From sequence record NC_048054.1: a DNA stretch of 64,000 nucleotides, one strand, 5' to 3'. A program made the position numbers and the translations under genes. Below, one piece after another: positions 16,589 through 63,769 of this stretch. Position 1 is the stretch's first letter, and each line of letters starts with the position of its first letter. The notes beneath the pieces are model-generated. The model searched no databases. It worked only from the letters and a program-made list of their open reading frames with translations, and had not been told where the DNA came from.

Positions 16589-16847
16589 CTCTATCCTCTA
16601 AAACAAATTGTAGTGTGCCCTGGATATTTACAGCATTCAGGCGTTTACCTGTAGATGCAATCAGGCCATTCAGAACGCCGATAAAGTCAGCGCTGTAACA
16701 GTCAGGAGCGATCTGGTGAACATAGATATCATCAGGCACGTCACCAGGGTTAAGCTGCCAAGCAGTACGCAAGGCAGCACCCATGAATGCCGGACGTTCT
16801 ACCAGATGCCTGTTCAGGAACGAACATACATCTTCGGCCGTTATCAT
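16554..16847 (-). CDS. Hypothetical protein, 97 aa
   Basis: ATGA overlap with the polymerase stop. Confidence 0.6.
   Translation of the reverse strand: MITAEDVCSFLNRHLVERPAFMGAALRTAWQLNPGDVPDDIYVHQIAPDCYSADFIGVLNGLIASTGKRLNAVNIQGTLQFVLEDRDEDLSITEEPR
16625..16633 (-). promoter_or_regulatory. CTGTAAATA-class promoter motif
   Basis: Exact motif 37 nt upstream of the clamp start. Confidence 0.6.
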
Positions 16848-19800: not shown

Positions 19801-20005
19801 TCAGGAACAACTCACCTTCTGTGCTACTGAATATCTTGCCGTTACGCAAGTCTTCGGTTGGCATGTGATCGAGGACGAGTAGTGCTTTACCACCTTTAGC
19901 GCTTTTACTTACGCCTTTTAGTATTCGAACACCGTCGTATGTCTGCTGGTCGGCAAACTGCTCAGGTGGATCGAAGTCAAAAGCTATATGCTTGATTTTC
20001 ACCAT
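16844..20005 (-). CDS. polA: Family A DNA polymerase with 3'-5' exonuclease and N-terminal UDG-like domain, 1053 aa
   Basis: Exonuclease motifs AVDTET, NAKFD, YAGLD. Polymerase motifs TGRTSASDPNLQQVP, DYSAHEVR (A), RNAVKTVIFGLIY (B), NSPVQG, VHDS (C). N-terminal ~200 aa UDG-like (DHMPTEDLRNGKIFSSTEGELF, PDYVLTFGK). Confidence 0.95.
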   Translation of the reverse strand: MVKIKHIAFDFDPPEQFADQQTYDGVRILKGVSKSAKGGKALLVLDHMPTEDLRNGKIFSSTEGELFLNQIQYLEDTFPTKTTLDDWNFLVVSYNMFKTYDKGEQFKEDADQAFADRIRDLIVEYKPDYVLTFGKAPFKALNADKIQFSKDHYEHWYGVEIPTKLKHDGKKHSFIHLPNVSYHTVLNPMHIAGSSYTLGYMARWMLPWLNKGMRYKIDEVTCGKNRNWDLVYVTKVKQLEKILKRMKRAKKVAVDTETENLNRIKNKILTVQLSDDGKKAYVIPVYHRDSPFSPKELRKVKELFKDFFEENDNKYQIYTNAKFDLNVMRSNFGIRSYAANVWDIQAGEFAFDENAKSLLNVTGNGYYNLANLTMQFGCTVYHEVSFGKEMRATIADVDLDESVQEYAGLDVIVPFRIAQKQMLRANDIKYGKYESMVSEQISDQIHAFSILETTGAGADIDYLFKLNLPNSPINEEIRNVEREFMNSPEVKAANKVICKDDNVPKMGLMGKVEVTKFDMSKSEHKQILFFDVMKLKPLKEGEQLRENGKKTGKLDKDFQAAYADIPLVSLYTKLGKAYKLKNAYVNSLLKLWGESEDFKHDRSIRPTYGYLGVVTGRTSASDPNLQQVPSRSEMGKLIKRILIARKNRLLIKVDYSAHEVRGWSIISGDQGVADVFEQGRKLRHRFRTVPDPWIEHRVEAEGDVHKINAAYFFGIPNVMDVTKSVRNAVKTVIFGLIYQQGDKGLAKSTGREVEEIAEIKGKFLKRFPVGLKWFDKIKKFAHENFFVESPVGRRRHLWGLMLPESHKEANMVHAACDRRAVNSPVQGFGSDLMMSAIRILDRMKYDYWKANGEYPDFDMNVSVHDSLTVDCDYKWIFLALDMIERAMTSAVVEKVQKRHEGFEFTSVPEIDFEIGASEKDVQGWNFSYTQLKKLIKDGLEIKRDELGETDLDVEKTLDSIMEDQYHLMSDWMKKQLWANDIKIRSMDKVNPLTNKDKKNIEEWLAELPKNTKTFEKYKAEEEAKKAAAAGGAPKKIKISRSMLKSALKGIAKK

Positions 20006-20044: not shown

Positions 20045-20053
20045 TATTTACAG
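20045..20053 (-). promoter_or_regulatory. CTGTAAATA-class promoter motif
   Basis: Exact motif 40 nt upstream of the polA start, just after a terminator. Confidence 0.65.
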
Positions 20054-20066
20054 ATTTAGAAACGAG

Positions 20067-24600: not shown

Positions 24601-27526
24601 ACACATAGCTGAACTTGAAGCGGTTGACGAACTCAACAGCACCACGCACACGAACACGCACACCGCCGATATCAACGTTGAACGTACCAGTCTGCAAATA
24701 GCTCAGGCCGACGATAAAGATTGTGTTACGAGGTGACTGAGAGATCACATCGTACATACGTTCTTCGCCCCACGTGTTCACAGTGTCAGCAGTGATTGGT
24801 ACTGCGTTCCAGCCGTCAACGATTTTGTGGAGGTCGTCACACCAGTTCGCTACGAGGTTAGACGGACAGATGATCAGAGGACGAATGCCTTCTTCACCTA
24901 AATCGTCCAGCTCTTTGATAGTAGCCGCGATATCAGTCAGACCGATAATCGTTTTACCACCACCAGGCGCGATAAAGATTGTTGCAAAGCGCGGACGACG
25001 ACGCAGAGTTTTGTGCGCTTCGACCTGATGCGGCAGTAATGCTGCACCATCTTTCAGACCAGGAATACGAATATCATCAATGGTGATACCGCTGTCTGGT
25101 TTCAGACGTTCGATCTCAGTTTCAGCCGATTCGAAAATCTCAAGAGACTTAGGAATCACGTCGCTGTACATGGTAGCGAACGGCAGAATGATTTGTTGCA
25201 GACGGCCAGAACCTGGAGCCTGATCAGATTCAATCAGAGAGCTAAACAGTTTCTTACGGTCAGCGCGAACCAGAGACTGTGCCATTTCACGATACAACGC
25301 ACCACCGAAGTAGTTGTTGAGGCGTGCCATGTCAGACAGTTTGGACTTCTCACCCATTACGAAGTAGTGAGTGTGTGACGGCAGAGATTCGGTAGCAGCC
25401 GTAATGCTTCCCATCTCATTGAGAGAGGTTGCAATCAGGTTTGAACCACGCAGACCAGCAGCATCGTTCAGCACACGAATCATAATGCGCAGCATAGTCA
25501 GAGCAGGACGCTCGTTTGACATATCAGGCACTGAGAAGTCGTTGGCAATCAGGTTCTCATACAGGCCGTTGTCCATCGGGCTTTCGGACAGCGCAGCGTT
25601 CTCTGCATCCATGCCGATAGCTTTACGCGCATTCTCCACCAGCGTTTTCAGGTCAGGAACTTGTTTGTTCTTGAGCATGAACTCGTAGGTCTGGCAAGTC
25701 TGTGCGATGATGTTCAGCAACTCAGGCAGGTTAGAACCTTCGGTGGAGTTATACTTGATAGTGGATTCGCTCACACTCTCAATCAACTTACCGCTACCAG
25801 ATTCAACCTTAGCAGCTTCGATCATCGTGTCATACGACGGACGATACAGAGCCATGCCACCAGACGCCTGATTGTGATAGATGTTACCAATCACGTTCGA
25901 GGCAGAACGGAAGTTCGGTGCTTCACCTGGCTCTGCGAAGTCGTAGCCTAAAGCATCAGCAACGTCCAGAGAGTTTGGAGACTTCATACCGACAGTACGA
26001 GTTTCGTTAACTGCCAGACCGCCACCGTTTGAGGTGTTTACGATCAGAGAGAAGTCAGGGTCTATACCGATACACACATCACTGAAACGAGACAACGATT
26101 TGGCTTTCGCCTGTACGTCGCGGTCGAAATCCAGATTACCGTTCTGGATAGCGAACATGTTGGTGCGCAGGGTGTCGTGCTCAGTAGACAGCGGAACGCC
26201 TTTCTCGAACAGGTCTTCCAGCACACCGTTCAATGAGGTTTCGTAAGTCTTCACCATGTCGATATCAATATCTTCACGGCGAGGCAGCACCGCCATTGTA
26301 CCGTTCGGCATGATAGTCATACCGTGCTCGTCAGCCACAACATCATTCACCACGTAGCCGAACTTCTCACGCAGCTTTTTCAGTTCAGGCAGCGTGGTAG
26401 CGGAGGTAACGTAACGAGGAATACGTGCAGCACGAGTGATACCAGTACGAGTAGAACCAGCAACACGGAAGTAGTAGCTCGCCCAGCCCTGGAACCAACG
26501 ATACAGACACATGGTTTGCGTGTCAGCACCCTGAGAGATGTACTCAACCATCTCTTTCTCGAAGTTAACGATCAGGCCGCCTTCGACGCGAACGTCGGTT
26601 GCCAGCGCTACTTCGTTGAACTCGACAGGAGTGTCGTTGCTGATCTTCATCGCCTGAATCTTGCGATCAATCATCTGCTTACCTGGGATGGAGCGAATGC
26701 CGATAGTCATGAAATCACCAAGACCATCAACCACAGCTTTATCCAGATTGCGGAACAGATCGATATCAATCGTGTTCATCAGCGGATGGATAGAACGCAG
26801 AGCAGCGTTATACACAGACCAGTCTTTATCCAGAGGGATACGAACCATCTTGGTGTCGAACGCATTGCTGTTACTGCGGTCAACGCCGAAGATATCTTTG
26901 TAGATGGTCTTCGCCACACGAATAGCAGACTGCGCTACTTCGGAGCTGTAGGTACGCAGGTTGGCGCTTTCGAAGTTCGCGTCTTTATCAACACGGGGAC
27001 GGTCGCTACCCTGATTGTTCAGAACGTTGAAGTTACCGTTCGAGGCCAGCGGGCTAGTCGGGCACGGAGTACCAGACATGATGATATCTTTACCGCCAGG
27101 GAAACGCGTACTGTTTTCGATGATCGCACCAGATGATGCAGACAGGTGTTCGGCCAGAGCAGTTTTAATCTCACGGCTCAGCTTGTCACCGTTCAACATC
27201 ATATTGATTTTCAGCGAGGACGCTTCGATGTTGTTCTTGATACGCTTAACGAAGTCATCAGGAGAGACTTCGATCATATCTTCGAACTCTGCACCGTTAA
27301 TAACGATGTAGTTGATCAGGTCGAATGCCGCATAGATGCGAGCAACGGTAGAAGCCGTGAACACTGCGAGAGTTTCGTAGTTACGGCGCGACTTCCCTGT
27401 GGCGTACATCTTCGCCGTTTTGGCGTCGAACTCGGGCGGCAACGGACGAACAGAAAGTGCCTGATTGAACGTATCGGCAATTTGCTGTGTCGCGGTTGCT
27501 GACCTACTAATAATCTGATTCATCAT
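21677..27526 (-). CDS. Giant SNF2-family (SF2) helicase/translocase, 1949 aa
   Basis: APGGGKT, LIICPSNLVANW, LLDESHK, IATGT, LIVFTRY, SEGHNMQ and DQSTARIFR motifs; ~830-aa uncharacterised N-terminal region. Confidence 0.9.
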   Translation of the reverse strand: MMNQIISRSATATQQIADTFNQALSVRPLPPEFDAKTAKMYATGKSRRNYETLAVFTASTVARIYAAFDLINYIVINGAEFEDMIEVSPDDFVKRIKNNIEASSLKINMMLNGDKLSREIKTALAEHLSASSGAIIENSTRFPGGKDIIMSGTPCPTSPLASNGNFNVLNNQGSDRPRVDKDANFESANLRTYSSEVAQSAIRVAKTIYKDIFGVDRSNSNAFDTKMVRIPLDKDWSVYNAALRSIHPLMNTIDIDLFRNLDKAVVDGLGDFMTIGIRSIPGKQMIDRKIQAMKISNDTPVEFNEVALATDVRVEGGLIVNFEKEMVEYISQGADTQTMCLYRWFQGWASYYFRVAGSTRTGITRAARIPRYVTSATTLPELKKLREKFGYVVNDVVADEHGMTIMPNGTMAVLPRREDIDIDMVKTYETSLNGVLEDLFEKGVPLSTEHDTLRTNMFAIQNGNLDFDRDVQAKAKSLSRFSDVCIGIDPDFSLIVNTSNGGGLAVNETRTVGMKSPNSLDVADALGYDFAEPGEAPNFRSASNVIGNIYHNQASGGMALYRPSYDTMIEAAKVESGSGKLIESVSESTIKYNSTEGSNLPELLNIIAQTCQTYEFMLKNKQVPDLKTLVENARKAIGMDAENAALSESPMDNGLYENLIANDFSVPDMSNERPALTMLRIMIRVLNDAAGLRGSNLIATSLNEMGSITAATESLPSHTHYFVMGEKSKLSDMARLNNYFGGALYREMAQSLVRADRKKLFSSLIESDQAPGSGRLQQIILPFATMYSDVIPKSLEIFESAETEIERLKPDSGITIDDIRIPGLKDGAALLPHQVEAHKTLRRRPRFATIFIAPGGGKTIIGLTDIAATIKELDDLGEEGIRPLIICPSNLVANWCDDLHKIVDGWNAVPITADTVNTWGEERMYDVISQSPRNTIFIVGLSYLQTGTFNVDIGGVRVRVRGAVEFVNRFKFSYVLLDESHKVKNFSGGQAGSQVHFNTKAVFTAPSVRYARIATGTLVTDRVRDIVGQAALMTPAMFGDSLDVAYDGAKDDIEMIRRAHSRMANHTAFISFKRKHWAFMLPNPIDTFIQVEIDDPSVPNSALHQEVYNAMYAEVLEKLDEAAKNAKKKSGGGDDDDDEAGGGDGDSTSDIDEDEIEDGDDLGALLASNADLNMYFQRMEMMLTDPMGDDVARLTFEAAGVTNFVSAKVLTIIDRIRKHFEVQPERDPLIGEQQIFEWKPGVEPRELDIAVYNGQKYLARKQSEEFKRQALPPSMVPPPDDPDYWKPEVQGKLIVFTRYVRAANAIYNALPANYKKVAVVYHGEVGKLGQNKDANLDAFKTDPNVQILIANEQAISEGHNMQMGSRIIRCDTPWSPGTYDQSTARIFRPDVAAAKLDENGKPGDMAREVVFIDWVMTNKTLEVGKVARLMWKTLEKTRFDEKGNQRYEALDQYKLDPIKMSAKLLIDNNTMEDFAPYFLAKRDLNDIESQEFQEMRKTTIAAMQALPSTPALTDFRVMEQTPLVANQKIPDRNGWGTERLLDWARNRNFTSGEGLKDSLNRAPVVTEFGNGVVVSVTVRMVDGKLRGDSPISTVRVRLAGSGETVAVPATKVHIATKVDKNDLKRFFEARKAWANEKDRKRANAEANRVEVEDTVADETQTADTKQTEKKVEAQERKAARVAKRVENKKTGKPINEGVEEAAKKVRRRKVADLPPLANTTTRMKPGAKAVAEATGADMAMALTPTVYNGFVALYADATDPDSEALKAFDFVEFGDYVYYDCVYYSDFEAMLDFIEVKKKLAFDKPSEKRLEFVLDFFDESTPRMGFNVKLATKGQEQLPKFFLVKHKSASDKKHVKAYPMIMEDRLRIMFDLKTNPQMKRFVGTKIPNTRKFGTFDLSPGMWIGFVKNVATAKARINKIVKAGYNITNITKVTKALDKLKLTMSKNKSV

Positions 27527-29194: not shown

Positions 29195-29203
29195 TATTTA
29201 CAG
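29195..29203 (-). promoter_or_regulatory. CTGTAAATA-class promoter motif
   Basis: Exact motif 23 nt upstream of the HNH start. Confidence 0.6.
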
Positions 29204-29205
29204 AC

Positions 29206-36568: not shown

Positions 36569-36577
36569 TATTTACAG
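36569..36577 (-). promoter_or_regulatory. CTGTAAATA-class promoter motif
   Basis: Exact motif 30 nt upstream of the sbcD start. Confidence 0.6.
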
Positions 36578-36579
36578 AA

Positions 36580-37851: not shown

Positions 37852-37860
37852 TATTTACAG
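37852..37860 (-). promoter_or_regulatory. CTGTAAATA-class promoter motif
   Basis: Exact motif only 6 nt before the ATG at 37845; no Shine-Dalgarno in between. Confidence 0.55.
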
Positions 37861-37884
37861 AAGCACATCCTTGTGCCTACAGAT

Positions 37885-49813: not shown

Positions 49814-49822
49814 TATTTACAG
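49814..49822 (-). promoter_or_regulatory. CTGTAAATA-class promoter motif
   Basis: Exact motif 38 nt upstream of the clamp-loader start. Confidence 0.6.
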
Positions 49823-49838
49823 ATTTTAGACAAAAAGA

Positions 49839-50116: not shown

Positions 50117-50204
50117 CTATTCTCCTGTGCTAAAAATTTCTCGTTCTTCTGAATTATGTTTACAGTTTACTGCGAGTAGTCACACAAGAATAAAGTCAGA
50201 AAAG

Positions 50205-50552
50205 TCTTAAACTCCAATAGGCTCTCCGTGAAAAACCTATTGGAGTCCACCCTCGCCAGATGACGGTCCAGCCAGGGCTTTCTCCCCGTGTCTTTCAAAT
50301 GCACCGACACGGTAGCGCTCGCGGTCTTACGCTCTTTGTGGCAGCGAACGTTTCGGCAGGTAGCGTGGTTCGCAGCCTAGAGCAGCCGCATTCGGCCATA
50401 GCGATAACGCGGTGTTACGCTACTTGGCCTAGGGTGACTCAGGGCCGAGTCTGTACAAAAAAAAAAAGAGTTCGGCCTATCCCCAAATTCGGCAAAAGAA
50501 ACAGGCCGAACTAAACAGTCAGCGCAAACTCCGTATGCACTGTTTTGTACTG
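50205..50552 (-). ncRNA. Candidate structured non-coding RNA (~340 nt), family unknown
   Basis: Gene-free interval with at least 8 inverted repeats, an upstream sigma70-like promoter and a terminal perfect 11-bp hairpin followed by T-rich sequence. Transcription not demonstrated. Confidence 0.5.
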
Positions 50553-50558
50553 TTACAA

Positions 50559-50587
50559 ATTAGAAACATTCCAAAATATTCAGACAA
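50559..50587 (-). promoter_or_regulatory. Sigma70-like promoter TTGTCT-N17-TCTAAT
   Basis: -35 box at 50582..50587, -10 box at 50559..50564, 17-nt spacer, pointing into the structured interval. Confidence 0.5.
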
Positions 50588-50590
50588 TTC

Positions 50591-51526: not shown

Positions 51527-52102
51527 CTAAGCCCTCAAATCAACCAAGATAGATGCAGACAAATCTCTGAGCATGTCACGGCCTAGAGGTGTGTACATCA
51601 CTTGCGAAACAACAATGCGTTCGAGAAAGAGGCGTGAACTGATAACGTCCTGTCCTGTCTTCTGCCGAACAAATTCGATGATGGCTGATGGTGGTTGAAT
51701 GAGGAACGTTAAGATCTCCGCGTCGTGCAAGACGCTTCCCATCTCTGTAACAGGTTTCATTTCTGTTTCCTGATCGAGAATGTAAGAGATCACACGGTCC
51801 TCATTACCGATGTTGCGGTGCAGTTTAAAGAACTTACGAGCAGCACTCACGGTGTGCATAAAGTCGTAGTCCGAAGAAGTCGGCATACGGAGAAAGAGTG
51901 AAGCGAGCAGCAGGTTTATTTCTAACTGCGGACCTTGCTCGATGTTCAACATGGCGTGTGAGGTTAACACCACATTCAACGAGAAGTCACGAGTGTAGAG
52001 CGGGTGAGAGTTAGCTGTCTGATCAAAGTAGTCAAGGGCCTGACGTAACCCTTGACGTTTCAACAGGTGCTCTGCCTTAATACGCGTCAGGCGGAACATC
52101 AC
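51527..52102 (-). CDS. Hypothetical protein, possibly a degenerate HD-domain fold, 191 aa
   Basis: Helical. NSHPLY...SLNV, LLLASLF (HD position lost) and LHDAEIL recall the HD layout without the HD dyad. Confidence 0.5.
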   Translation of the reverse strand: MMFRLTRIKAEHLLKRQGLRQALDYFDQTANSHPLYTRDFSLNVVLTSHAMLNIEQGPQLEINLLLASLFLRMPTSSDYDFMHTVSAARKFFKLHRNIGNEDRVISYILDQETEMKPVTEMGSVLHDAEILTFLIQPPSAIIEFVRQKTGQDVISSRLFLERIVVSQVMYTPLGRDMLRDLSASILVDLRA

Positions 52103-53073
52103 TCAGCGCCACGAATCTCTTTGAGCGAGTTCTTGATCGCTTTACGCAACGTCTTGCCTGTGTCGATACCATCGAGGTGACGAGCGAACACGTTAGCAAA
52201 CAGCGTTGTCGGATTCTTCATGATCGCTTTATCAAGGTCAGGTCGACCTTCTGCGATTTGAATCTCACCCGGCCAGAGTTCGGCAACTGCCTGGCTATCG
52301 TTAGCGGCAATCAGTTCCAGCTCTCGGACCGAGATAGAGTTCTGACGCGCAATCGTGCGGAAGATCATGTCAACGAAAGGCAAGAGGTCTTCGGACACAA
52401 CGTTCTTCACGTCTTTCGCATCACCAGCTCGCTGGAAATCTTCCAGCAGACCTTCGAGGTGAGTCTGCGTGATCTTCTGGACGTTACGCAGTTTCTTAAA
52501 CAGCATCATCCATTTGACCTTGCGCTTAGAACTCAGCAGATGCGTCCACACCGATTCGCCGAGAGCGATGATCAGTTTGTTGTAGACGTCAACGCTAACG
52601 CAATCACGGTCAACGAAGATCGTAATCTCGTCCTGCCACTCGTCCTTCTTAAACTTAGAGCGGAACGAGTGTGTCTTCGAACCAGACTGCTGGACGAAAT
52701 TGATTTGCTTGCAGCGACGAACCGCTTCATTCAGGCCGTACTTCTCAATGACCTTAGGAAGTTTCTTCACTGCCATGCGACAGGCTTTGGCTACTTCGGC
52801 CTCACGCCCATAAAGAGCAAGACGAGGCAGACCACCATAGACAGGCATCGAAGCATATGGTCTGACAGTCACACCGCAGACGGACATACCTGGCTCAGGG
52901 TCTGGACCGAGAACAGCAAGTACATCGCCAGCCTTAGGACTGAACTTAATTGTTTCTGGTTCAGGCGAACCAAGCGTATTAGCCAGAAGGCCAACAGTTT
53001 TGCCGGTTGCCAGAACAAGATGATTTTTATTACCCTGTCTTACGACAACGTAATCTCTTTCACTATGTTTCAT
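52099..53073 (-). CDS. Hypothetical protein, 324 aa
   Basis: Long ORF; 4-nt overlap with the downstream gene. Confidence 0.75.
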   Translation of the reverse strand: MKHSERDYVVVRQGNKNHLVLATGKTVGLLANTLGSPEPETIKFSPKAGDVLAVLGPDPEPGMSVCGVTVRPYASMPVYGGLPRLALYGREAEVAKACRMAVKKLPKVIEKYGLNEAVRRCKQINFVQQSGSKTHSFRSKFKKDEWQDEITIFVDRDCVSVDVYNKLIIALGESVWTHLLSSKRKVKWMMLFKKLRNVQKITQTHLEGLLEDFQRAGDAKDVKNVVSEDLLPFVDMIFRTIARQNSISVRELELIAANDSQAVAELWPGEIQIAEGRPDLDKAIMKNPTTLFANVFARHLDGIDTGKTLRKAIKNSLKEIRGAE

Positions 53074-53084
53074 AACGGCCTTTA

Positions 53085-53603
53085 TTAATAGAGTGAGTCA
53101 ACGATGTGGTTGACGTGAACCTGCGCTGTGTGACCGCGACAGGCGCGTCCTTCGGTTTGTTCGAACGTTGCTGGCTGCCAGTGTTCTGTCGGCTCAACGG
53201 AAACGATAACCTGTTCGTCCCACATATCTCCGTCTTCAAGAACACCTGCGATCATGCGAAATGCCGCTGGGCAATCTTTACCTAGATGCGATAGTTGCGC
53301 AATGATGACATGAGGCTTGGTTCGATCTTCGAGTTCATCGAGCGCCCAGCCAAGTTCGGACAGAGAACGAATTTGGAATGATTCTACTTGAGAATTTCCA
53401 CGATACTCGTCTGGTCCGAAATAAACAATTTCAAAATCGTTGACGTCGGTTTGACTAACAAAAAAGTGAGGCGCGTCCACCAAAATAGAAGGTGCGGCGC
53501 GCATCTGGAGAAAGCCCATATATGGGTATGGAACATCACGGACTTCTACCGAACAGGACTTCCCAGCAAAATTTTGGATTATGCTGTGTGCGAGATTATT
53601 CAT
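53085..53603 (-). CDS. Hypothetical protein (~172 aa)
   Basis: Start moved to ATG 53603 (GAGG RBS, MNNLAH). Confidence 0.7.
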   Translation of the reverse strand: MNNLAHSIIQNFAGKSCSVEVRDVPYPYMGFLQMRAAPSILVDAPHFFVSQTDVNDFEIVYFGPDEYRGNSQVESFQIRSLSELGWALDELEDRTKPHVIIAQLSHLGKDCPAAFRMIAGVLEDGDMWDEQVIVSVEPTEHWQPATFEQTEGRACRGHTAQVHVNHIVDSLY

Positions 53604-53610
53604 AGTAACC

Positions 53611-53805
53611 TCATTTCTCAGGAGTTGGTGAGAGGTGAGAGGACGAGTAGTGATAACCAAACGCGACTTGGTTATAGGACTGACGCGCCTGCTTCTGTTT
53701 GCGCTTGGCTTCGGCCTCACGTTTGTCCAGCTCGTCAAAAATACCTACGCGACGGGCATAACGAAACTTCGGGTGTACGGAGATATGTTTGACGATAGCT
53801 GTCAT
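53611..53805 (-). CDS. Hypothetical protein, 64 aa
   Basis: GAGGA RBS; CTGTAAACT variant motif at 53834..53842. Confidence 0.65.
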   Translation of the reverse strand: MTAIVKHISVHPKFRYARRVGIFDELDKREAEAKRKQKQARQSYNQVAFGYHYSSSHLSPTPEK

Positions 53806-53844
53806 ATATTAATCCTCTATGTTGATTGCTGTTAGTTTACAGTA

Positions 53845-54369
53845 TCAATCACTCTTACCTAATTGACGCTCAAGCTCGTAGGCGAAGTAATCATCCCACG
53901 TGGCGAAACCGTCTTTGGCCAGCATACGATCAAACTCACGGTCGGATTTAGATCCCTTAGGAAAGCGAATCTTGTTGGACAGACGTTGGAGTCGGTCGTA
54001 CATAAACCGAGACTGCTTGACGATCGGATTCTTTTCAGGCAGATGATTCTGCAACAGCTTGTAGCTGAACACCAATGGAAAATCTTTGTTCGGCACAGTG
54101 TCGCCCAACAAACGATGGACGGTATTCAGGTACTGCTCGATTTGAGCATGACATTCAGAATGAGCATAGTACCAGTCATCCAGTGAAGCCAGACCTTGAG
54201 TTTCCTCATAGACCAAGGCATCATACATGACCATGAGAATTGGCTTCTCTTCCTTCTTTTCTTTGTACGCCTGAAACAGCTTGGCACAAGTGCCGTACTT
54301 GTTTTGCAGAATCGTTTCCAAGATTGCTGCGTAGCGCACAACTTCATATTCGGTAAGTACCTTACTCAT
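53845..54369 (-). CDS. Hypothetical protein, 174 aa
   Basis: GGAG RBS; starts 3 nt after the stop of the polymerase-like gene. Confidence 0.7.
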   Translation of the reverse strand: MSKVLTEYEVVRYAAILETILQNKYGTCAKLFQAYKEKKEEKPILMVMYDALVYEETQGLASLDDWYYAHSECHAQIEQYLNTVHRLLGDTVPNKDFPLVFSYKLLQNHLPEKNPIVKQSRFMYDRLQRLSNKIRFPKGSKSDREFDRMLAKDGFATWDDYFAYELERQLGKSD

Positions 54370-54372
54370 ACT

Positions 54373-55989
54373 TTACTCCGAGAATATCTTTTTGTCAGAA
54401 AACTTCTTGAGCACAAACTCGGCATAATCGCTCGTCACGCTGTCTCCTTCAACGCAGAGCAATGCACCATCGTGCTCAAGAGAATACACACCCTTGACGT
54501 TAGGGCAGTTAAGAATCGCATCGAAAAGAAAATAACTCTCCCACCCAGAAAGCATGTGGTTGAGAACGCGCTTCTTAATCTTCTTGTCCGTATCGTCAGG
54601 ATCAGGATCATAGTTCGATCCCGTTGCACACTGGAGAACGCCGTACTCTGGCCTCCGTGCATTTTTATTTTTTCGGAATTTGGAACGATACACACCAAGC
54701 AGATCAGTGATGGCGAAATACAGAGGCGTCATCCTCGTATTCCAATCCAATATCTCCTCTTTCACTTTCGAGACAGGCATGAAGCGAGCAAGTTCCTTAA
54801 AGACATTGCTATACTTCGTTGTTTCAAGTTGGCCCGCCGAGAAGATCGTTCCGTATAAACAAACTTTTGCTGCGCGTCTGTCCAATTTCATTATGCGGCT
54901 GATATCGTCAACGGAGCTTACCGTATCAAACATCGCACACTCAATACCGTAAGCGCCGAACTCTTTACGCAACACGTTGAACTGGCTGGACTTCATATCC
55001 CAGTTAGTGCCAATCGTGTAACATTGTTCTTTCAGGTCTGACGGCAAGTTCTGGAACCCACCACCAACTTCGAACAGTCGTCCGCCAATTTGCGACAGCC
55101 TGTATTTAGGCCAATAACGAATGACAAGAGGTTTTTCGCTAACGATCTGAACAGGCCCCGACACAATAGTATCGAGCAACGTCTTAACCTGCAGGTACTG
55201 CTTCTTCGCCTTGTGATTAGCAATCAAGGACCTGTCTTCTAAATAAGCAAGGATAGGTTCAATGTTCACTTCATTAGGCATCAGCTTGTCGAGTACCTTA
55301 CGATAAAGAGCACGGCCTTTAAGTTCCTTACCGTTCCCCCTGTCTCGGTTACGATCAAGCGAACTAAGATCGTGGACAGGTCGTTTGAACGGCAGTTTAG
55401 AATTTTTCTGAATCTGCGACCACACCGTTACCCCGTAATCCTCCCTTAAAATTTTAAGAGGACTATAGAATCGAATGCGGTACAAAATATCGTAATGAGA
55501 CTGCGGCTTAAAATGCCCGTACATCCCGTCTAAGATTTCAGGACGCATCCTAAACTCTCGACTAAGGCCCTTTTTCTTATCGTACGGTTTCGTTTCAAAC
55601 ACGTTAGCCATCAACCAATCAAGGGATCTACTAAACGTGCCTTTCTTCGACTTGGCATATCGCCCTACAGCAACATTATCACCGCCCCTTTGATGACCGA
55701 ACACCATTGGTAGCTTTTCTTTGCCTAATGAGCTTGGAAACGGCACCCAGACCCGTCCAAACTTCTTCTTTTTGTGTTTACGTGCAGGATAAAGGCTGCA
55801 TTGAAGAATGTGCCAGAAGAATAAGTTCAATTGAGCACGGAACTCACGTTGTTCAGCATCAGGCCCCTCGTACGGGCAAGCGTTTATAACGTTGTCACGC
55901 ACCCAAATAACGACTTCCTTCTCCTGGTACGAGGGATTCGTGACGAGCACGGGCCCCTGACCGGAAACGATTCGTTTTTTCATGTTCAC
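54373..55989 (-). CDS. Divergent family-A / T7-RNAP-like nucleotidyltransferase lacking an exonuclease domain, 538 aa
   Basis: In order: GGRLF..GGFQNLP, NWDMKSSQF (motif A Asp), RRAAKVCLYGTIF (motif B Lys), NHMLSGWES, SLEHDG (motif C HD). Basic N-terminal half with a possible winged helix. Confidence 0.6.
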   Translation of the reverse strand: MNMKKRIVSGQGPVLVTNPSYQEKEVVIWVRDNVINACPYEGPDAEQREFRAQLNLFFWHILQCSLYPARKHKKKKFGRVWVPFPSSLGKEKLPMVFGHQRGGDNVAVGRYAKSKKGTFSRSLDWLMANVFETKPYDKKKGLSREFRMRPEILDGMYGHFKPQSHYDILYRIRFYSPLKILREDYGVTVWSQIQKNSKLPFKRPVHDLSSLDRNRDRGNGKELKGRALYRKVLDKLMPNEVNIEPILAYLEDRSLIANHKAKKQYLQVKTLLDTIVSGPVQIVSEKPLVIRYWPKYRLSQIGGRLFEVGGGFQNLPSDLKEQCYTIGTNWDMKSSQFNVLRKEFGAYGIECAMFDTVSSVDDISRIMKLDRRAAKVCLYGTIFSAGQLETTKYSNVFKELARFMPVSKVKEEILDWNTRMTPLYFAITDLLGVYRSKFRKNKNARRPEYGVLQCATGSNYDPDPDDTDKKIKKRVLNHMLSGWESYFLFDAILNCPNVKGVYSLEHDGALLCVEGDSVTSDYAEFVLKKFSDKKIFSE

Positions 55990-56050
55990 ATCATGATTAC
56001 CTGATTTTTTCTATCGTTTCTTTACAGAATCAGACAACTCTTAACCCGAA

Positions 56051-56152
56051 TGCTACAGCTGGAAGCTACAACAGCTAGACATGGAAGGCATGGGCTACAG
56101 CGGGCTAGCTACAACGCTCGTGGTACGCTTGAACATTACAACTACAGGTACA
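56051..56152. repeat. Cluster of short GCTACA-like direct repeats (iteron-like)
   Basis: GCTACA at 56052, 56065, 56094 and 56108; variants GCTAGA 56074, GCTAGC 56104, ATTACA 56135, ACTACA 56141, GGTACA 56147. Confidence 0.6.
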
Positions 56153-56392
56153 TCTTTAGGCGGCACGTTTCGGGGACATAGAAAATAAAGAAACCATGCT
56201 CCGAGCAGCCAAGATTGCACCCTCTACGCACCCTGGGTAGCGATCTAGCGGAAAACCCTAGGTCGTCTAAACCGTGTAAATTTTTCCAAAAAAGTAGTAC
56301 ATTTTTTGACCAAATGCCCCTTTTCAGACTAAAAATGAGGAAAATCCGAGAAAAATCAAGGACTTTCCCCAATTTTGAAACGAAAAATCAGA

Positions 56393-57052
56393 TCATTTTT
56401 TCTGTGAAACGCGTTTTCCGAGCTTAACACCGATTTGCGTCAGTATTCGCTTGACCGTTTCACCGTCGTGTTCAGCCATTGCAGCAGCTAAACGCTCGCC
56501 CTGTTCACGCGATAGCTCAGGCATGACCATTTTAAGCATCTGCGAGCGCATTTTAGCTGATTTAGACTTGCCTTTCGACACCGATACGCCTTCGTTAGCT
56601 GTGAGCGCACTGCTAATCGCTTTCTGCACACGACGATCACCGAAGATATCGCCGAATACGTCACCGAACAGGTCTTTGAACGATAGACCACCGCTCATAA
56701 TGTCGTTTTTCGTGAAACGAACAGGCTGTCCGAGCGCATTCACTTTATTGCAATGCACAGATTCAACCTGATTCGTGGTACGTCCACCAGCACGGAAGTT
56801 CTCGTCAGGGCGTGACGCTTTACCCTCTGCGCCCGGCTTTGTGTTGCCGTTGCGCAAATCAGGGTTACCTTCGACAGCTTTATCAGGGTCGAACATGTCG
56901 TCGGCTGTTTCGCTCTGATTCGCGTCAAACGGAATCTTACCTGTCAGCTTGTTGGGATCTGGCCAGCTATCTGGAATGTCAGAAGCAGGCTGTGGTTTAT
57001 TCGTCATATCCCCATTTGCTTCACCGCTCAAGCTGATCTTAATACGTGCCAT
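56393..57052 (-). CDS. Hypothetical protein with N-terminal KISLSG motif, 219 aa
   Basis: AGGAG RBS; low-complexity N-terminal half. Confidence 0.75.
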   Translation of the reverse strand: MARIKISLSGEANGDMTNKPQPASDIPDSWPDPNKLTGKIPFDANQSETADDMFDPDKAVEGNPDLRNGNTKPGAEGKASRPDENFRAGGRTTNQVESVHCNKVNALGQPVRFTKNDIMSGGLSFKDLFGDVFGDIFGDRRVQKAISSALTANEGVSVSKGKSKSAKMRSQMLKMVMPELSREQGERLAAAMAEHDGETVKRILTQIGVKLGKRVSQKK

Positions 57053-57061
57053 GTTAATCTC

Positions 57062-58183
57062 CTATCGGATTTTGAAGCCTTTGAAAATGTTATACGCAAT
57101 CTCTTTGCGCTGAATAGGACGAGTGGTACACACCCATTCCCACTGATCGTTCTTCGCTGTGCGTTTCTTCGGTGCCTCCATAACTTTCAGCACGTAGTTT
57201 TTGAAAGGCAGAACGAGAATGTCTTCTGGCTCAATCGCACCGCTACGCGCAGGCAGAACTACCGTAATGTTACCGACAGTCAGTTCCTGATCGTAGTTCA
57301 GCACGTTTGCTTCTTCGCTAATGTTGCCTTTAACAGGCGGAACACCTAAATCGAAGATCATCGTGACGTGTGAGAATGCCTCAATGCCTCTCACACGAAT
57401 CGTCACATGCTTACCACGCCAGCGTTCCAGATTGGCTGCCGTCAGTTCAACTTCAACGCCGTTAACCAACAACATAGGGCGTGGGAAAGCAGGTAACATG
57501 GTTTCATTCAGACGCACCGAATAAGTCGCCTGCGTAAAGTATTTTGGGATAAGCTGATCGAAATCCGCGTAACCGTCTTTACGTACCTGCCTGAATGTCG
57601 CTGGGCTGGTGGACTGATCGAGTGTATAACCCTCCAGTTCCTTGACGTGATAGTGCGTGGCGATGTTGTAGATGAAGCCCGTACTGACAAAGCCTGGCAC
57701 AACACCTTGACGATAGCAGATGCCACAGTTCGCAACGTTACCGCCATCCCATTTGACGTCGAACTCCTCACCTGTGTCGATACCCATCAGGTCAGCAGCA
57801 TCCATCGCAGCGTTCATCGCAGCGTTCATGCCATCGTCGATATCATCAAGGGAAACAGCTTGGCGCCCGCCGCCGAACATACCCTTGGAGACAGTATCGA
57901 TCTTAATGCCAGCCGACATTGCATCGGATTCACGGCCAAGTGATTTCAGGCCACCAGCCATGTTATCCAGAACATCGTTTTCGGTTTTGTTGCAACTACA
58001 GGTGAGGCCCATCTTCGCTTTCTTGAAGATGACGATATCGGTGGCGTCTACCTGTAGCGCCTGTTCGACTTTGGACTGCACAACCTTTTGCACACTGTCC
58101 AGTCGGCGCTGTACGCGTTCCGTTTCGTAGGTCTTGTGCCGGTCGTATGTGTTGCGGGGTTTCCCGCGTTCAATCCAGCTCAT
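57062..58183 (-). CDS. Putative virion structural protein (head-closure/neck-like) with Cys motifs, 373 aa
   Basis: GAGGAG RBS; late motif upstream; CSC...CGICYRQG and a C-terminal beta-rich domain. Functional call tentative. Confidence 0.45.
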   Translation of the reverse strand: MSWIERGKPRNTYDRHKTYETERVQRRLDSVQKVVQSKVEQALQVDATDIVIFKKAKMGLTCSCNKTENDVLDNMAGGLKSLGRESDAMSAGIKIDTVSKGMFGGGRQAVSLDDIDDGMNAAMNAAMDAADLMGIDTGEEFDVKWDGGNVANCGICYRQGVVPGFVSTGFIYNIATHYHVKELEGYTLDQSTSPATFRQVRKDGYADFDQLIPKYFTQATYSVRLNETMLPAFPRPMLLVNGVEVELTAANLERWRGKHVTIRVRGIEAFSHVTMIFDLGVPPVKGNISEEANVLNYDQELTVGNITVVLPARSGAIEPEDILVLPFKNYVLKVMEAPKKRTAKNDQWEWVCTTRPIQRKEIAYNIFKGFKIR

Positions 58184-58204
58184 AAAAGTTCTCCTCTGTG
58201 TGCT

Positions 58205-58212
58205 TGAAATTA
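58205..58212 (-). promoter_or_regulatory. TAATTTYA-class promoter motif
   Basis: TAATTTCA 22 nt upstream of 58183. Confidence 0.55.
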
Positions 58213-58282
58213 GTGACTAAGAATTTTGGACCTTTGCCCTGACAAATACTTATTTAGTGTATGTTAAAACGAGGAGCCTAAC

Positions 58283-58831
58283 ATGCGTATTCTTTCAGGC
58301 GACCCGGGAAAGGTTAACTTCGCGTTGTCTGTCACTGAATTTAAGGACAAGCGCATAGAGATTCTCGGGACGCGGATGTTCCAACATCCAATCCAAAACC
58401 TACATCACGACATGCGCCAACCAGTCAAAGAGTTCATGAAAGAGCTTGATGACATATGGAAGCGCTATGGACCGTTTGATGCGATGTGCTTCGAGCGATT
58501 CCAGTCGCGTGGACTTGGCGGCAACACTATTGAGGCTATCAGTTTGATGCTCGGTGTGCTGTCCATGTTCGCACTGAAAAAGAATTGCCCGATCGATTTG
58601 ATCACGGCAAGCCAGTGGAAGAACGCGTTCAACCGTACTATGGACCTTAAAGGTTATTACGCGCATTACAACCTGACTTCCAAAAAGAGTCGCAAAGCGA
58701 TTCACGAATTTGATGCCAGCCTTATTGGCATGTATACCTTCTATCGACATACGAACCGGAAACCATTCGCAGGCTTCGACCGCATTGTTGACGTCTACGT
58801 TCCGAAGTTCTTGTCATCTCCTGTACTGTGA
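58283..58831 (+). CDS. ruvC: RuvC-like Holliday junction resolvase, 182 aa
   Basis: MRILSGDPG (catalytic Asp), CFERFQ (Glu), ASQWKN, HEFDASLIG; GAGGAG RBS. Confidence 0.85.
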   Translation: MRILSGDPGKVNFALSVTEFKDKRIEILGTRMFQHPIQNLHHDMRQPVKEFMKELDDIWKRYGPFDAMCFERFQSRGLGGNTIEAISLMLGVLSMFALKKNCPIDLITASQWKNAFNRTMDLKGYYAHYNLTSKKSRKAIHEFDASLIGMYTFYRHTNRKPFAGFDRIVDVYVPKFLSSPVL

Positions 58832-59204: not shown

Positions 59205-59205
59205 T

Positions 59206-59214
59206 CTGTAAATA
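59206..59214 (+). promoter_or_regulatory. CTGTAAATA-class promoter motif
   Basis: Exact motif on the plus strand, 37 nt upstream of ATG 59251. Confidence 0.6.
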
Positions 59215-63744: not shown

Positions 63745-63753
63745 TATTTACAG
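63745..63753 (-). promoter_or_regulatory. CTGTAAATA-class promoter motif
   Basis: Exact motif 40 nt upstream of the primase start. Confidence 0.6.
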
Positions 63754-63769
63754 ATAAAGGACGTTAAGA

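What the first reader, a model, noticed from the sequence alone, without database searches (positions are those of the whole stretch)
54373..55989. Second, minimal family-A/T7-RNAP-like polymerase with intact catalytic residues
Seen: besides the full PolA, this 538-aa ORF has the ordered motifs GRL..QNLP, D (NWDMKSSQ), R..AK...Y (RRAAKVCLYGTIF), N....G.ES and HD (SLEHDG). It has no exonuclease motifs and carries a basic N-terminal half. Established: these are the palm and finger motifs shared by PolA and T7-type RNA polymerases; small divergent members (TV-Pol type) are known from mobile elements and viruses. Inference: it may be an origin-specific primase/initiator (it adjoins an iteron-like, AT-rich region), a single-subunit RNA polymerase reading one of the phage promoter motifs, or an enzyme acting on the structured element at 50.2-50.55 kb.
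Basis: partly seen in the sequence, partly recalled or inferred. Interest (0 to 1): 0.75.

Follow-up and report, generated by a model that had tools for sequence, protein, structure and literature searches.

The report
Minimal TV-Pol polymerase in jumbo phage
This unannotated 538-residue gene of the Dickeya jumbo phage AD1 encodes a stripped-down relative of DNA polymerase I, belonging to the little-studied TV-Pol family, with its catalytic residues intact; it most likely makes or primes DNA alongside the phage's normal replication machinery and is unlikely to be an RNA polymerase.

Summary
Window 54373-55989 (minus strand) is a real 538-aa gene of Dickeya phage vB_DsoM_AD1. It is under strong purifying selection (dN/dS 0.03-0.07). 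GenBank calls only its C-terminal 351 aa, as a hypothetical protein.

No Pfam, NCBIfam or PADLOC model matches. An AlphaFold model (pLDDT 79) matches family-A DNA polymerases in the PDB (46 hits at E<=1e-3). Profile-profile alignment to Pol I gives E 1.6e-7 and lines up every motif.

R304, D331, K375 and E484 are invariant in 98 distant homologues, and D507 is present in 97. The family profile matches Microcystis phage Ma-LMM01 gp030 over both domains (hhalign E 1e-27). I take gp030 to be the TV-Pol of Iyer et al. 2008, so this is a TV-Pol with the N-terminal domain.

AD1 already has a true PolA, a DnaG primase, a DnaB helicase and a sigma factor. The gene carries the same TCTGTAAA(T/G)A promoter-like motif as the replication genes. 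It sits in a hypervariable two-gene island between conserved flanks, about 2 kb from the main strand switch.

Best reading: an accessory primase-polymerase, unproven. The RNA polymerase reading is disfavoured. Verdict: new member of a known kind, of moderate interest.

The parts
54373..55989 (-). Full gene for the TV-Pol-type minimal family-A polymerase (538 aa; AD1 gp214, which GenBank calls only from 54373 to 55425)
   Evidence: ORF. Homologues align over the full length. dN/dS 0.03-0.07. AlphaFold pLDDT 79.2. Family-A fold.
55330..55989 (-). N-terminal basic domain (residues 1-220, pI about 10). It is homologous to the N-terminal domain of Ma-LMM01 gp030. Its fold is unassigned.
   Evidence: The hhalign alignment spans query residues 13-535. 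pI. The stand-alone model has pLDDT 61 and gave no significant Foldseek hit (best E 0.22); the list leans to winged-helix proteins.
55069..55320 (-). Thumb helices (H224-234, H243-254, H259-277) and a beta-hairpin carrying the invariant Arg304 (codon 55078-55080) in GGRLFE.GGGFQ..P. This corresponds to Pol I TGR668LSS..PNLQNIP.
   Evidence: Secondary structure of the model. R304 in 98/98 sequences. hhalign pairs it with Klenow R668.
54451..55008 (-). Palm and fingers. Motif A is Asp331 (54997-54999). Motif B is Lys375 (54865-54867), Tyr379 and Phe383. The motif-6-like stretch is G482.E484. Motif C is His506-Asp507-Gly508 (54466-54474).
   Evidence: D331, K375 and E484 in 98/98 and D507 in 97/98. 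Mapped to Klenow D705, K758, F762, Y766, G850 and H881-D882-E883. D331 lies at the end of strand 328-332 and HDG at the turn of hairpin 498-504/508-513.
56019..56028 (-). Promoter-like motif TCTGTAAAGA, 31-40 nt upstream of the start codon. It is a one-base variant of TCTGTAAATA, which precedes PolA, the DnaG primase, the clamp loader and other replication or recombination genes.
   Evidence: 9 exact TCTGTAAA sites against 2.25 expected, each 15-50 nt before a start codon. CTGT is invariant in all 10 relatives aligned, and 8 of them keep CTGTAAA; the two Alexandra-type sequences read CTGTTTT.
56052..56114 (-). Iteron-like cluster: four YTGTAGC copies in 63 nt, arranged as two units about 42 nt apart, directly upstream of the promoter-like motif
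   Evidence: Conserved in close relatives. The window-wide count of the heptamer is not enriched (23 against 15.8). Function unknown.
56259..56280 (-). Conserved intergenic box TTTACACGGTTTAGACGACCTA, unique in the window
   Evidence: It contains most of the invariant columns of the upstream alignment. Single occurrence. Function unknown.
56346..56372 (-). Terminator-like hairpin followed by a T-run after the upstream gene gp215. It separates the TV-Pol gene into its own transcription unit.
   Evidence: Conserved in relatives.
53845..54369 (-). gp213, a 174-aa ORF starting 3 nt after the TV-Pol stop codon, and a candidate partner subunit. Relatives have an ORF of 156-174 aa in the same slot, in three sequence types with no detectable mutual similarity.
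   Evidence: No Pfam, PHROG, NCBIfam or PADLOC hit.

Best explanation
The gene encodes a catalytically competent, exonuclease-free nucleotide polymerase of the TV-Pol family, the minimal branch of the family-A (Pol I / T7) superfamily. It belongs to the subset that carries an extra N-terminal domain.

Shown: the right-hand polymerase fold, the conserved template-contacting Arg, the two metal-binding Asp residues and the O-helix Lys, strong purifying selection, and homology over both domains to the TV-Pol-type protein of cyanophage Ma-LMM01.

Inferred mechanism: the enzyme is made together with the phage replication proteins from a TCTGTAAA(T/G)A-type promoter. Its basic N-terminal domain, possibly helped by the small protein encoded immediately downstream (gp213), holds single-stranded or origin-proximal DNA. 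The polymerase core then starts and extends short DNA strands without a pre-existing primer. This is how CcPol-MP of SCCmec works, the only biochemically studied relative. On this reading it is an accessory primase-polymerase used for initiation near the strand-switch region or for re-priming or repair. It acts beside the phage's own PolA, DnaG primase and DnaB helicase and does not replace them.

I put the identity part (an active TV-Pol-type polymerase) at about 0.85-0.9. The primase-polymerase role is the weaker part, and the confidence given is for the whole statement.
For: Fold: Foldseek against the PDB gives 46 hits at E<=1e-3, all family-A DNA polymerases (Pol I 8oo6 at 1.5e-5, KlenTaq, Pol theta, apicoplast Pol, T7 DNAP). 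Virophage and giant-virus replication proteins also appear in BFVD.

Profiles: hhalign of the family core against a Pol I alignment gives Prob 93.9 and E 1.6e-7. With a larger template it gives Prob 62 and E 7.5e-5, and the reversed control gives E 0.41. All motifs pair up.

Conservation: R304, D331, K375 and E484 are invariant, and H506-D507-G508 is in at least 92 of 98 sequences. dN/dS is 0.03-0.07.

TV-Pol membership: hhalign against Ma-LMM01 gp030 gives Prob 99.8 and E 1.1e-27 over 407 columns, and plain hmmsearch gives 1.4e-41. gp030 is the only such ORF in that genome, whose true PolA is gp178. gp030 lies beside two transposase genes, as PMC2579912 describes for TV-Pol elements.

Primase precedent: CcPol-MP is a dNTP-using primase built on an A-family polymerase plus a small partner (PMC7581432, PMC10061031).

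Context: the gene shares its promoter-like motif with PolA, the primase and the clamp loader. A small ORF abuts the gene in every relative. A distant family member sits between an integrase and a ParA-like gene, as a replicon's own replication protein would. The gene lies about 2 kb from the main divergent strand switch, and the cumulative GC-skew minimum falls at 182-188 kb of the record.
Against: No biochemistry exists for any TV-Pol that has the N-terminal domain.

The phage already has a DnaG-type primase and a DnaB helicase, so a second primase is not obviously needed.

The gene has none of the neighbours used to infer priming in TV-Pols: no D5-like helicase, resolvase, integrase or transposase.

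The downstream ORF is not shown to be an OB-fold or ssDNA-binding protein, and its three sequence types share no detectable similarity.

The Arg of the RxxxK motif is not conserved family-wide.

The Glu steric gate and the Glu of motif C (HDE) that typify DNA Pol I, and that CcPol keeps at E710, are replaced here by Q336 or N338 and by G508. Sugar choice is therefore open.

The GC-skew and strand-switch signal is confounded by transcription direction. The repeat cluster is short.

That gp030 is the Ma-LMM01 protein meant by Iyer et al. is my inference, because the paper's text gives no gene number.
Confidence: 0.5

Rival explanations
1. It is a primer-dependent accessory DNA polymerase for gap filling, lesion bypass or recombination-associated synthesis. 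It would work like Pol theta or Pol nu or a second phage PolA, with no priming activity of its own.
For: The best structural matches are DNA polymerases, including Pol theta. There is no proofreading domain, which is typical of bypass enzymes. The promoter-like motif is shared with recombination and repair genes such as the recombination endonuclease and an HNH endonuclease. CcPol alone, without its partner, only extends primers (PMC7581432).
Against: TV-Pols occur as the sole replication protein of small elements and virophages, which requires priming (PMC2579912). The conserved extra N-terminal basic domain and the tightly linked small ORF are not explained by this reading. The hypervariability of the locus is unusual for a housekeeping repair enzyme.
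Confidence: 0.2
2. It is the polymerase of a fast-swapping two-gene cassette (TV-Pol plus a variable small ORF) that serves conflict rather than bulk replication. Possibilities are a selfish element resident in the phage, an allele-specific origin/initiator pair that biases inheritance in mixed infections, or a counter-defence device that makes a decoy nucleic acid.
For: Between AD1 and Alexandra-type phages the flanking genes are 83-93% identical. The TV-Pol is only 41-46% identical, the adjoining ORF is replaced by unrelated sequence, and the next two ORFs are 50-60% identical. The true PolA is 83-85% identical to that of Yoloswag and JA13, where the TV-Pol is 17-36% identical. TV-Pols are typically carried by mobile elements (PMC2579912). 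Short direct repeats differ between lineages at the same upstream position.
Against: The gene sits at the same syntenic position in every member of the group, with no integrase, transposase or flanking repeats. Within lineages it is under strong purifying selection. There is no match to known defence or anti-defence models. The lineage-specific repeats are two- to four-copy families that could be chance.
Confidence: 0.15
3. It is a miniature single-subunit DNA-dependent RNA polymerase of the T7 type that transcribes a subset of phage genes from a phage-specific promoter.
For: It belongs to the same superfamily as T7 RNAP. Motif C is HDG, like the HDS of T7 RNAP and unlike the HDE of DNA Pol I. 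No Glu steric gate is present. T7 RNAP does appear in the fold search at E 1.5e-3. A comparative review lists no RNAP of their own for these jumbo phages (PMC7824862).
Against: The phage encodes a sigma factor and a DksA/TraR-like protein, which implies host RNAP is used. No Pfam model matched, so the RNA-polymerase models did not match. hhalign against T7 RNAP is not significant (Prob 1.7). The position of T7 Tyr639, which selects ribose, is Phe383 here and Met or Phe across the family. At 538 aa it has no room for the promoter-recognition elements of T7-type enzymes. DNA polymerases outrank RNAP by 49 places. The CTGTAAATA motif precedes this gene itself, as expected if another enzyme reads it.
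Confidence: 0.07
4. It is a catalytically dead polymerase fold that has been re-used as a DNA-binding or scaffolding protein.
For: The motif C Glu and the steric-gate Glu are lost, and the Arg of RxxxK varies.
Against: Both metal-binding Asp residues, the O-helix Lys and the template Arg are invariant or nearly so across 98 sequences at 16-25% identity. That pattern is expected only if catalysis is selected.
Confidence: 0.03

Closest known systems
TV-Pol family (Iyer, Abhiman & Aravind 2008, PMC2579912), the subset with an N-terminal globular domain; example: Microcystis phage Ma-LMM01 gp030
   Same: Minimal family-A core: thumb helices, a beta-hairpin with an invariant Arg, a palm with two Asp residues, and fingers with a conserved Lys. 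There is no nuclease domain and there is an extra N-terminal domain. Size is 500-600 aa. It co-exists with a normal replicative polymerase in the same genome. Homology is direct (hhalign E 1.1e-27, hmmsearch 1.4e-41).
   Different: It is not next to a D5-like helicase, resolvase, integrase or transposase. It is a fixed, syntenic gene of a whole jumbo-phage lineage rather than an obvious inserted element. The Arg of RxxxK is only K/R in this clade and is variable family-wide. The N-terminal domain is predicted as alpha+beta rather than all-helical.
CcPol-MP primase of staphylococcal SCCmec elements, and the PolA-SSB primases (PMC7581432, PMC10061031)
   Same: An A-family polymerase domain without proofreading, followed directly by a small ORF. 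It is the only relative with biochemistry: primer-independent, dNTP-using DNA synthesis that needs the small partner.
   Different: CcPol lacks the TV-Pol N-terminal domain. It keeps Klenow E710 and F762, whereas here these positions are Q336 or N338 and Y379. Its partner MP is an OB-fold SSB, whereas gp213 is untested and unrelated in sequence. Its operon also has a helicase and serine recombinases, which are absent here.
Bacterial and phage DNA polymerase I (Pfam PF00476), including the phage's own PolA at window 16844-20005
   Same: The same fold and the same order and spacing of the TGR..Q..P motif and motifs A, B, 6 and C.
   Different: It is below the detection limit of the Pfam model. 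It has no 3'-5' or 5'-3' exonuclease. Motif C reads HDG rather than HDE, there is no Glu steric gate, and Phe replaces Tyr766. It is about half the size and evolves far faster than the co-resident PolA.
T7-type single-subunit RNA polymerases
   Same: The same superfamily. Motif C has a small residue after the Asp (HDS in T7, HDG here), and there is no Glu at the steric gate.
   Different: There is no significant sequence or profile match. Phe stands in place of the ribose-sensing Tyr639. The N-terminal promoter-binding domain and specificity loop are absent at this size. The phage has a sigma factor.

Membership tests
TV-Pol family (Iyer et al. 2008) | Detectable homology to a named member | tested here: met
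   The family profile A2 against Ma-LMM01 gp030 gives hhalign Prob 99.8 and E 1.1e-27 over 407 columns, and hmmsearch gives 1.4e-41. It is the only hit in that genome. Caveat: that gp030 is the protein meant in the paper is inferred from its transposase neighbours, because the text gives no gene number.
TV-Pol family (Iyer et al. 2008) | [quoted passage not shown] | tested here: met
   R304 is in 98/98 sequences. It lies in strand 305-307 after hairpin 280-298 of the model.
TV-Pol family (Iyer et al. 2008) | RRM-like palm with two conserved metal-binding Asp residues | tested here: met
   D331 in 98/98 and D507 in 97/98. They lie at the strand end and the hairpin turn of the model.
TV-Pol family (Iyer et al. 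2008) | Fingers with an RxxxK motif | tested here: inconclusive
   K375 is in 98/98. Position -4 is R or K in 16 of the 17 jumbo-phage clade sequences, with P0009 having Val, and is V/K/R/E family-wide. The alignment in that loop may be imprecise.
TV-Pol family (Iyer et al. 2008) | Thumb built on two antiparallel helices; no fused or linked nuclease | tested here: met
   Helices 243-254 and 259-277 precede the hairpin. There is no nuclease domain in the protein or its immediate neighbours.
TV-Pol family (Iyer et al. 2008) | Linkage to a D5-like helicase, or to a resolvase, integrase or transposase (mobile-element context) | tested here: not met
   None lies within about 10 kb in AD1. The position is syntenic in all relatives. 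A distant family member does sit between an integrase and a ParA-like gene. This is a contextual trait of the family and not a structural requirement for membership.
TV-Pol family (Iyer et al. 2008) | Primase and DNA polymerase activity (predicted for the family) | not testable with these tools
   This needs enzyme assays. Only CcPol-MP has been assayed (PMC7581432).
Family-A DNA polymerase (Pol I type, Pfam PF00476) | Match to the curated family model | tested here: not met
   No Pfam hit at E<=1 for the protein and no DNA_pol_A hit at E<=10 for any of its 16 close relatives. The PDB sequence search with profiles found no polymerase.
Family-A DNA polymerase (Pol I type, Pfam PF00476) | Right-hand fold with the Pol I palm, fingers and thumb topology | tested here: met
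   Foldseek gives 46 PDB hits at E<=1e-3, all family-A DNA polymerases, with probability 1.00. TM-scores are only 0.3-0.37, so the match covers the core and not the whole chain.
Family-A DNA polymerase (Pol I type, Pfam PF00476) | Motif C His-Asp-Glu and the Glu steric gate five residues after the motif A Asp | tested here: not met
   Motif C is HDG, with G508 in 97/98. The gate position is Q336 in the ungapped alignment or N338 when anchored on the Ser-Gln pair, and is never a conserved Glu.
T7-type single-subunit RNA polymerase | Match to the RNA polymerase family models or profile | tested here: not met
   No Pfam hit. hhalign against T7 RNAP gives Prob 1.7. T7 RNAP is rank 50 in the fold search.
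T7-type single-subunit RNA polymerase | Tyr at the Tyr639 position, which selects ribonucleotides | tested here: not met
   It is F383 here. Family-wide the position is M 42, F 39 and Y 10 of 98.
PolA-SSB (CcPol-MP type) primase | Small OB-fold ssDNA-binding partner encoded next to the polymerase, plus a helicase and recombinase in the operon | tested here: inconclusive
   A 156-174 aa ORF abuts the gene in all relatives. No helicase or recombinase is in the operon.

The most novel reading that the evidence does not exclude
The TV-Pol gene, the variable small ORF behind it and the lineage-specific short repeats in front of it may form a self-contained, allele-specific initiator-origin module near the jumbo phage's main strand switch. 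On this reading the basic N-terminal domain recognises its own repeats and the polymerase core lays down the first DNA primer there. Swapping the cassette between related phages would then change which genome is replicated preferentially in mixed infections. That would be a phage counterpart of plasmid incompatibility groups, built on a family-A polymerase that primes.
Probability: 0.12. Interest if true: 0.75.

Novelty: new member of a known kind. Interest (0 to 1): 0.45.

Why it matters
TV-Pols are thought to resemble the ancestor of both Pol I-type DNA polymerases and T7-type RNA polymerases. Only one relative, CcPol-MP, has ever been assayed, and it lacks the N-terminal domain.

This work assigns a function class to PHROG 30690 and links it to PHROG 34692. 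Both are listed as 'unknown function', and no Pfam, NCBIfam or PADLOC model covers them. It corrects a truncated gene model in a RefSeq phage.

The family has at least 338 representative clusters in metagenomes, many on large phage contigs. A cultivable phage-host pair (Dickeya or Erwinia phages with laboratory strains) that carries a stable, expressed, strongly constrained copy is a practical system. It could be used to ask what a second, primer-independent family-A polymerase does beside a complete replisome, and how family-A enzymes choose between ribo- and deoxyribonucleotides without the usual Glu and Tyr gates.

Tried and rejected
- **Direct family scans:** Pfam, NCBIfam and PADLOC scans of the protein, its relatives and its neighbours found nothing. 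PHROGs gave only unnamed families.
- **PDB sequence searches:** sequence and profile searches found no polymerase. The one hit at E 5e-5 was a designed repeat protein matching a short helical stretch, which I treat as spurious.
- **hhalign against single sequences:** comparison with the phage's own PolA as a single sequence was not significant. Significance appeared only with a small Pol I alignment. hhalign against T7 RNAP was not significant.
- **N-terminal domain:** the stand-alone model has pLDDT 61. Foldseek gave no hit below E 0.2. The list is rich in winged-helix proteins, which I treat only as a lead.
- **Upstream 400 nt as a structured RNA:** the tool gave z -4.5. In my own controls, coding segments scored z -1.0 and -3.6 and the upstream regions of relatives -0.5 to -4.7, so there is no distinctive signal (an earlier run timed out). 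Rfam and tRNA scans of the window were empty. Sigma-70 promoter and terminator scans were at chance level.
- **The three downstream ORF types:** no detectable homology between them.
- **Plasmid collection:** it held only a 175-aa fragment in two Proteus records.
Full report
**What the sequence is.** The window is 100% identical to Dickeya phage vB_DsoM_AD1 (NC_048054, 261,658 bp, genus Alexandravirus). Window position = record position minus 124,000. The deposited annotation calls only the C-terminal 351 codons, as a hypothetical protein (gp214). Relatives in 55 Erwinia, Dickeya and Yersinia jumbo-phage records align from residue 1-15 onward, so the long ORF is the gene. Between close relatives dN/dS is 0.03-0.07, which shows a functional protein under strong constraint. 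The N-terminal 235 residues have pI 10.1.

**Checking the motifs.**
- An exhaustive HMMER search of 1.8 billion representative proteins found 338 at E<=1e-3. Most are 450-700 aa proteins from metagenomes that match the C-terminal core.
- In an alignment of 98 of these (16-25% identity to the query), R304, D331, K375 and E484 are invariant. Y296, G303, Q313, K320, N329, G482, H506, D507 and G508 are at 90% or more.

**Is it a family-A polymerase?** Direct searches fail. There is no Pfam, NCBIfam or PADLOC hit, and PHROG 30690 is listed as 'unknown function'. PDB sequence searches found no polymerase. Structure and profile comparison succeed.

- An AlphaFold model built on the 17-sequence alignment has mean pLDDT 79.2, and about 90 in the C-terminal half.
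- Foldseek against the PDB gave 46 hits at E<=1e-3, all family-A DNA polymerases: Pol I, KlenTaq, Pol theta, apicoplast Pol and T7 DNAP. T7 RNA polymerase came only at rank 50. TM-scores are 0.3-0.37, so the similarity covers the core.
- I fetched E. coli polA and T7 genes 1 and 5 as landmarks and verified the classical residue numbers.
- hhalign of the family core against a small Pol I alignment gave Prob 93.9 and E 1.6e-7. A larger template gave Prob 62 and E 7.5e-5. A reversed-sequence control gave E 0.41.

The alignment pairs the residues as follows:

| This protein | Klenow | T7 enzymes |
|---|---|---|
| R304 | R668 | |
| D331 | D705 | |
| K375 | K758 | |
| Y379 | F762 | T7 DNAP Y526 |
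| F383 | Y766 | T7 RNAP Y639 |
| G482 | G850 | |
| H506-D507-G508 | H881-D882-E883 | |

In the model, D331 ends strand 328-332 and HDG sits at the turn of hairpin 498-513. This is the geometry expected of a palm.

Differences from Pol I:
- There is no exonuclease domain.
- Motif C reads HDG and not HDE.
- Phe stands at the Tyr766 position.
- No Glu stands at the steric gate. The equivalent residue is Q336 or N338, depending on the alignment register, which I could not resolve without coordinates.

**Which branch of the superfamily?** Iyer, Abhiman and Aravind (2008, PMC2579912) defined the TV-Pol family. These are minimal family-A-like polymerases of transposons and viruses, including cyanophage Ma-LMM01, and some carry an extra N-terminal domain.

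- In Ma-LMM01, the 506-aa gp030 lies beside two transposase genes.
- The family profile matches gp030 with hhalign Prob 99.8 and E 1.1e-27 over 407 columns, spanning query residues 13-535. The N-terminal domain is therefore shared too.
- Plain hmmsearch gives 1.4e-41. It is the only such ORF in that genome, whose ordinary PolA is gp178.
- gp030 is PHROG 34692, and some metagenomic relatives hit both PHROGs.

I therefore file the protein as a TV-Pol with the N-terminal domain. One caveat applies: the paper's text does not give the Ma-LMM01 gene number. BFVD hits to a virophage 'DNA replication protein' and a giant-virus 'origin-binding' protein fit this assignment. As far as the papers I could search show, no TV-Pol with this domain has been assayed. 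The only studied relative is CcPol-MP of SCCmec, a primer-independent, dNTP-using DNA primase that needs a small partner protein (PMC7581432, PMC10061031). The jumbo-phage reviews and genome papers I read do not mention this gene.

**Context in the phage.**
- AD1 has one TV-Pol and one true PolA. The PolA is 1053 aa with exonuclease and polymerase domains.
- It also has a DnaG-type primase, a DnaB-like helicase, an SSB, a RecA-like protein, ligases, a clamp loader, a sigma factor and a DksA/TraR-like protein. Both the replisome and the host-RNAP-plus-sigma route for transcription therefore appear complete.
- TCTGTAAA occurs 9 times against 2.25 expected. Each copy lies 15-50 nt upstream of a start codon. 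The genes are gp161, PolA, an HNH endonuclease, a recombination endonuclease, gp187, the clamp loader, the TV-Pol (as TCTGTAAAGA), gp219 and the DnaG primase. The gene thus appears to be co-regulated with replication and recombination genes.
- A conserved terminator-like hairpin after gp215 sets the gene apart as its own transcription unit.

**The upstream spacer.** The 400-nt spacer holds a conserved unique box (56259-56280) and four YTGTAGC copies within 63 nt (56052-56114). Relatives have different short repeats at the same place, but these are two- or three-copy families and could be chance. The spacer's predicted RNA structure is not distinguishable from coding controls.

**A hypervariable island.**
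- Between AD1 and Alexandra-type phages the flanking genes (gp215, gp216, gp217, gp209, gp210) are 83-93% identical.
- The TV-Pol is 41-46% identical, and the next ORFs gp212 and gp211 are 50-60% identical.
- The ORF that abuts the TV-Pol stop codon (gp213, 174 aa) is replaced by ORFs of 156-172 aa in three sequence types with no detectable similarity.
- The true PolA is 83-85% identical to that of Yoloswag and JA13, where the TV-Pol is only 17-36% identical.
- Together with the low dN/dS within lineages, this points to cassette exchange or episodic divergence rather than decay.
- Distant family members sit on large phage-like contigs near helicase, nuclease and nucleotide-metabolism genes. 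One sits between an integrase and a ParA-like gene.

**Position in the genome.** Genes run leftward up to window 58.2 kb and rightward after it. The cumulative GC skew of the whole record has its minimum at 182-188 kb (window 58-64 kb) and its maximum near 60 kb. The TV-Pol gene is about 2 kb from the switch. This fits an origin-proximal location, but transcription direction confounds the signal.

**Interpretation.** I rate it at about 0.85-0.9 that this is an active TV-Pol-type polymerase. The most likely role is an accessory primase-polymerase expressed with the replication genes. Its basic N-terminal domain, and perhaps gp213, would hold the template. This rests on analogy with CcPol-MP and on context, so I give the whole statement 0.5. 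The rivals are:
- a primer-dependent repair or bypass polymerase (0.2);
- a conflict-related or selfish cassette (0.15);
- a miniature RNA polymerase (0.07), disfavoured by the sigma factor, the Phe at the Tyr639 position, the lack of any RNAP profile match and the small size;
- a dead fold (0.03).

Nothing connects the protein with the structured region at 50.2-50.55 kb. That region is real (z -6.6) but is a separate matter.

**Verdict.** This is a new, previously unannotated member of a known but almost unstudied family, of moderate interest.

Noticed in passing
window 10749-10756, 20047-20054, 29197-29204, 36571-36578, 37854-37861, 49816-49823, 56021-56028, 63747-63754 (minus strand) and 59205-59212 (plus strand): The promoter-like motif TCTGTAAATA lies 15-50 nt upstream of the start codons of replication and recombination genes: gp161, PolA, an HNH endonuclease, a recombination endonuclease, gp187, the clamp loader, the TV-Pol, gp219 and the DnaG primase. 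There are 9 exact TCTGTAAA sites against 2.25 expected. Looser CTGTAAA sites precede gp170, gp201, gp206 and gp212. The only sites near the tail genes are two looser CTGTAAA matches lying inside ORFs (7710 and 4824), and none lies near the head genes in the window. It is probably the promoter class of a phage sigma factor.
   Followed up: partly
window 53085-55989, against flanks 51527-53073 and 56393-58831: This is a hypervariable island. The TV-Pol, the ORF behind it (gp213) and gp212/gp211 diverge sharply, or are replaced, between AD1 and Alexandra-type phages. The genes on both sides are 83-93% identical.
   Followed up: partly
window 54373-55989 (record 178373-179989): The RefSeq/GenBank gene model gp214 is truncated to the C-terminal 351 codons (record 178373-179425). 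This leaves a false 970-nt 'intergenic' gap. Homologues support the 538-codon ORF.
   Followed up: yes
window 50150-50590 (minus strand), between gp206 and gp207: This is a 440-nt non-coding stretch with very strong predicted RNA structure (-163 kcal/mol, z -6.6, 0 of 100 shuffles as stable). It includes long perfect hairpins. There is no Rfam match. I did not examine it in relatives.
   Followed up: partly
window 58183-58283 and whole record: The main divergent strand switch of the genome lies at window 58.2 kb (record 182.2 kb). The cumulative GC-skew minimum is at record 182-188 kb and the maximum near 60 kb. This suggests an origin region within or just beyond the right end of the window.
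   Followed up: partly
L025 10040-10567 (Proteus mirabilis NZ_OL790811, a 4.08-Mb record filed as a plasmid): An unannotated 175-aa ORF is 33% identical to residues 288-441 of the TV-Pol (E 2e-15). It is apparently a fragment of a related polymerase gene in a bacterial chromosome-sized record.
   Followed up: partly
window 16844-20005 (minus strand): In the phage's true PolA (1053 aa), Pfam finds the exonuclease domain at residues 231-420 and the polymerase domain at 520-891. About 230 N-terminal residues are left unassigned. A paper on the related phage PaBG reports a uracil-DNA glycosylase domain fused at that position. I did not test this here.
   Followed up: no
window 21677-27526 (minus strand): This is a giant 1949-aa protein annotated as a DNA helicase. 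Its only recognisable part is an SNF2-type helicase core at residues 854-1388. More than 1,300 residues have no domain assignment.
   Followed up: no
window 53845-54369; L011 7599-8069; L013 7563-8081; L014 7596-8072: Two of the three unrelated ORF types behind the TV-Pol gene end in a similar short acidic tail, roughly (E/D)R.L.K(S/P)D at the C-terminus. This recalls the partner-binding tails of SSB proteins. The similarity is weak (hhalign E 0.03).
   Followed up: no
L024 22746-24266 and L033 7270-8232 (Microcystis phage Ma-LMM01): Like AD1, this cyanophage carries both an ordinary PolA-type polymerase (gp178, next to a separate 3'-5' exonuclease gene) and one TV-Pol-type gene (gp030, beside transposases). 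gp030 is PHROG 34692, 'unknown function'.
   Followed up: yes
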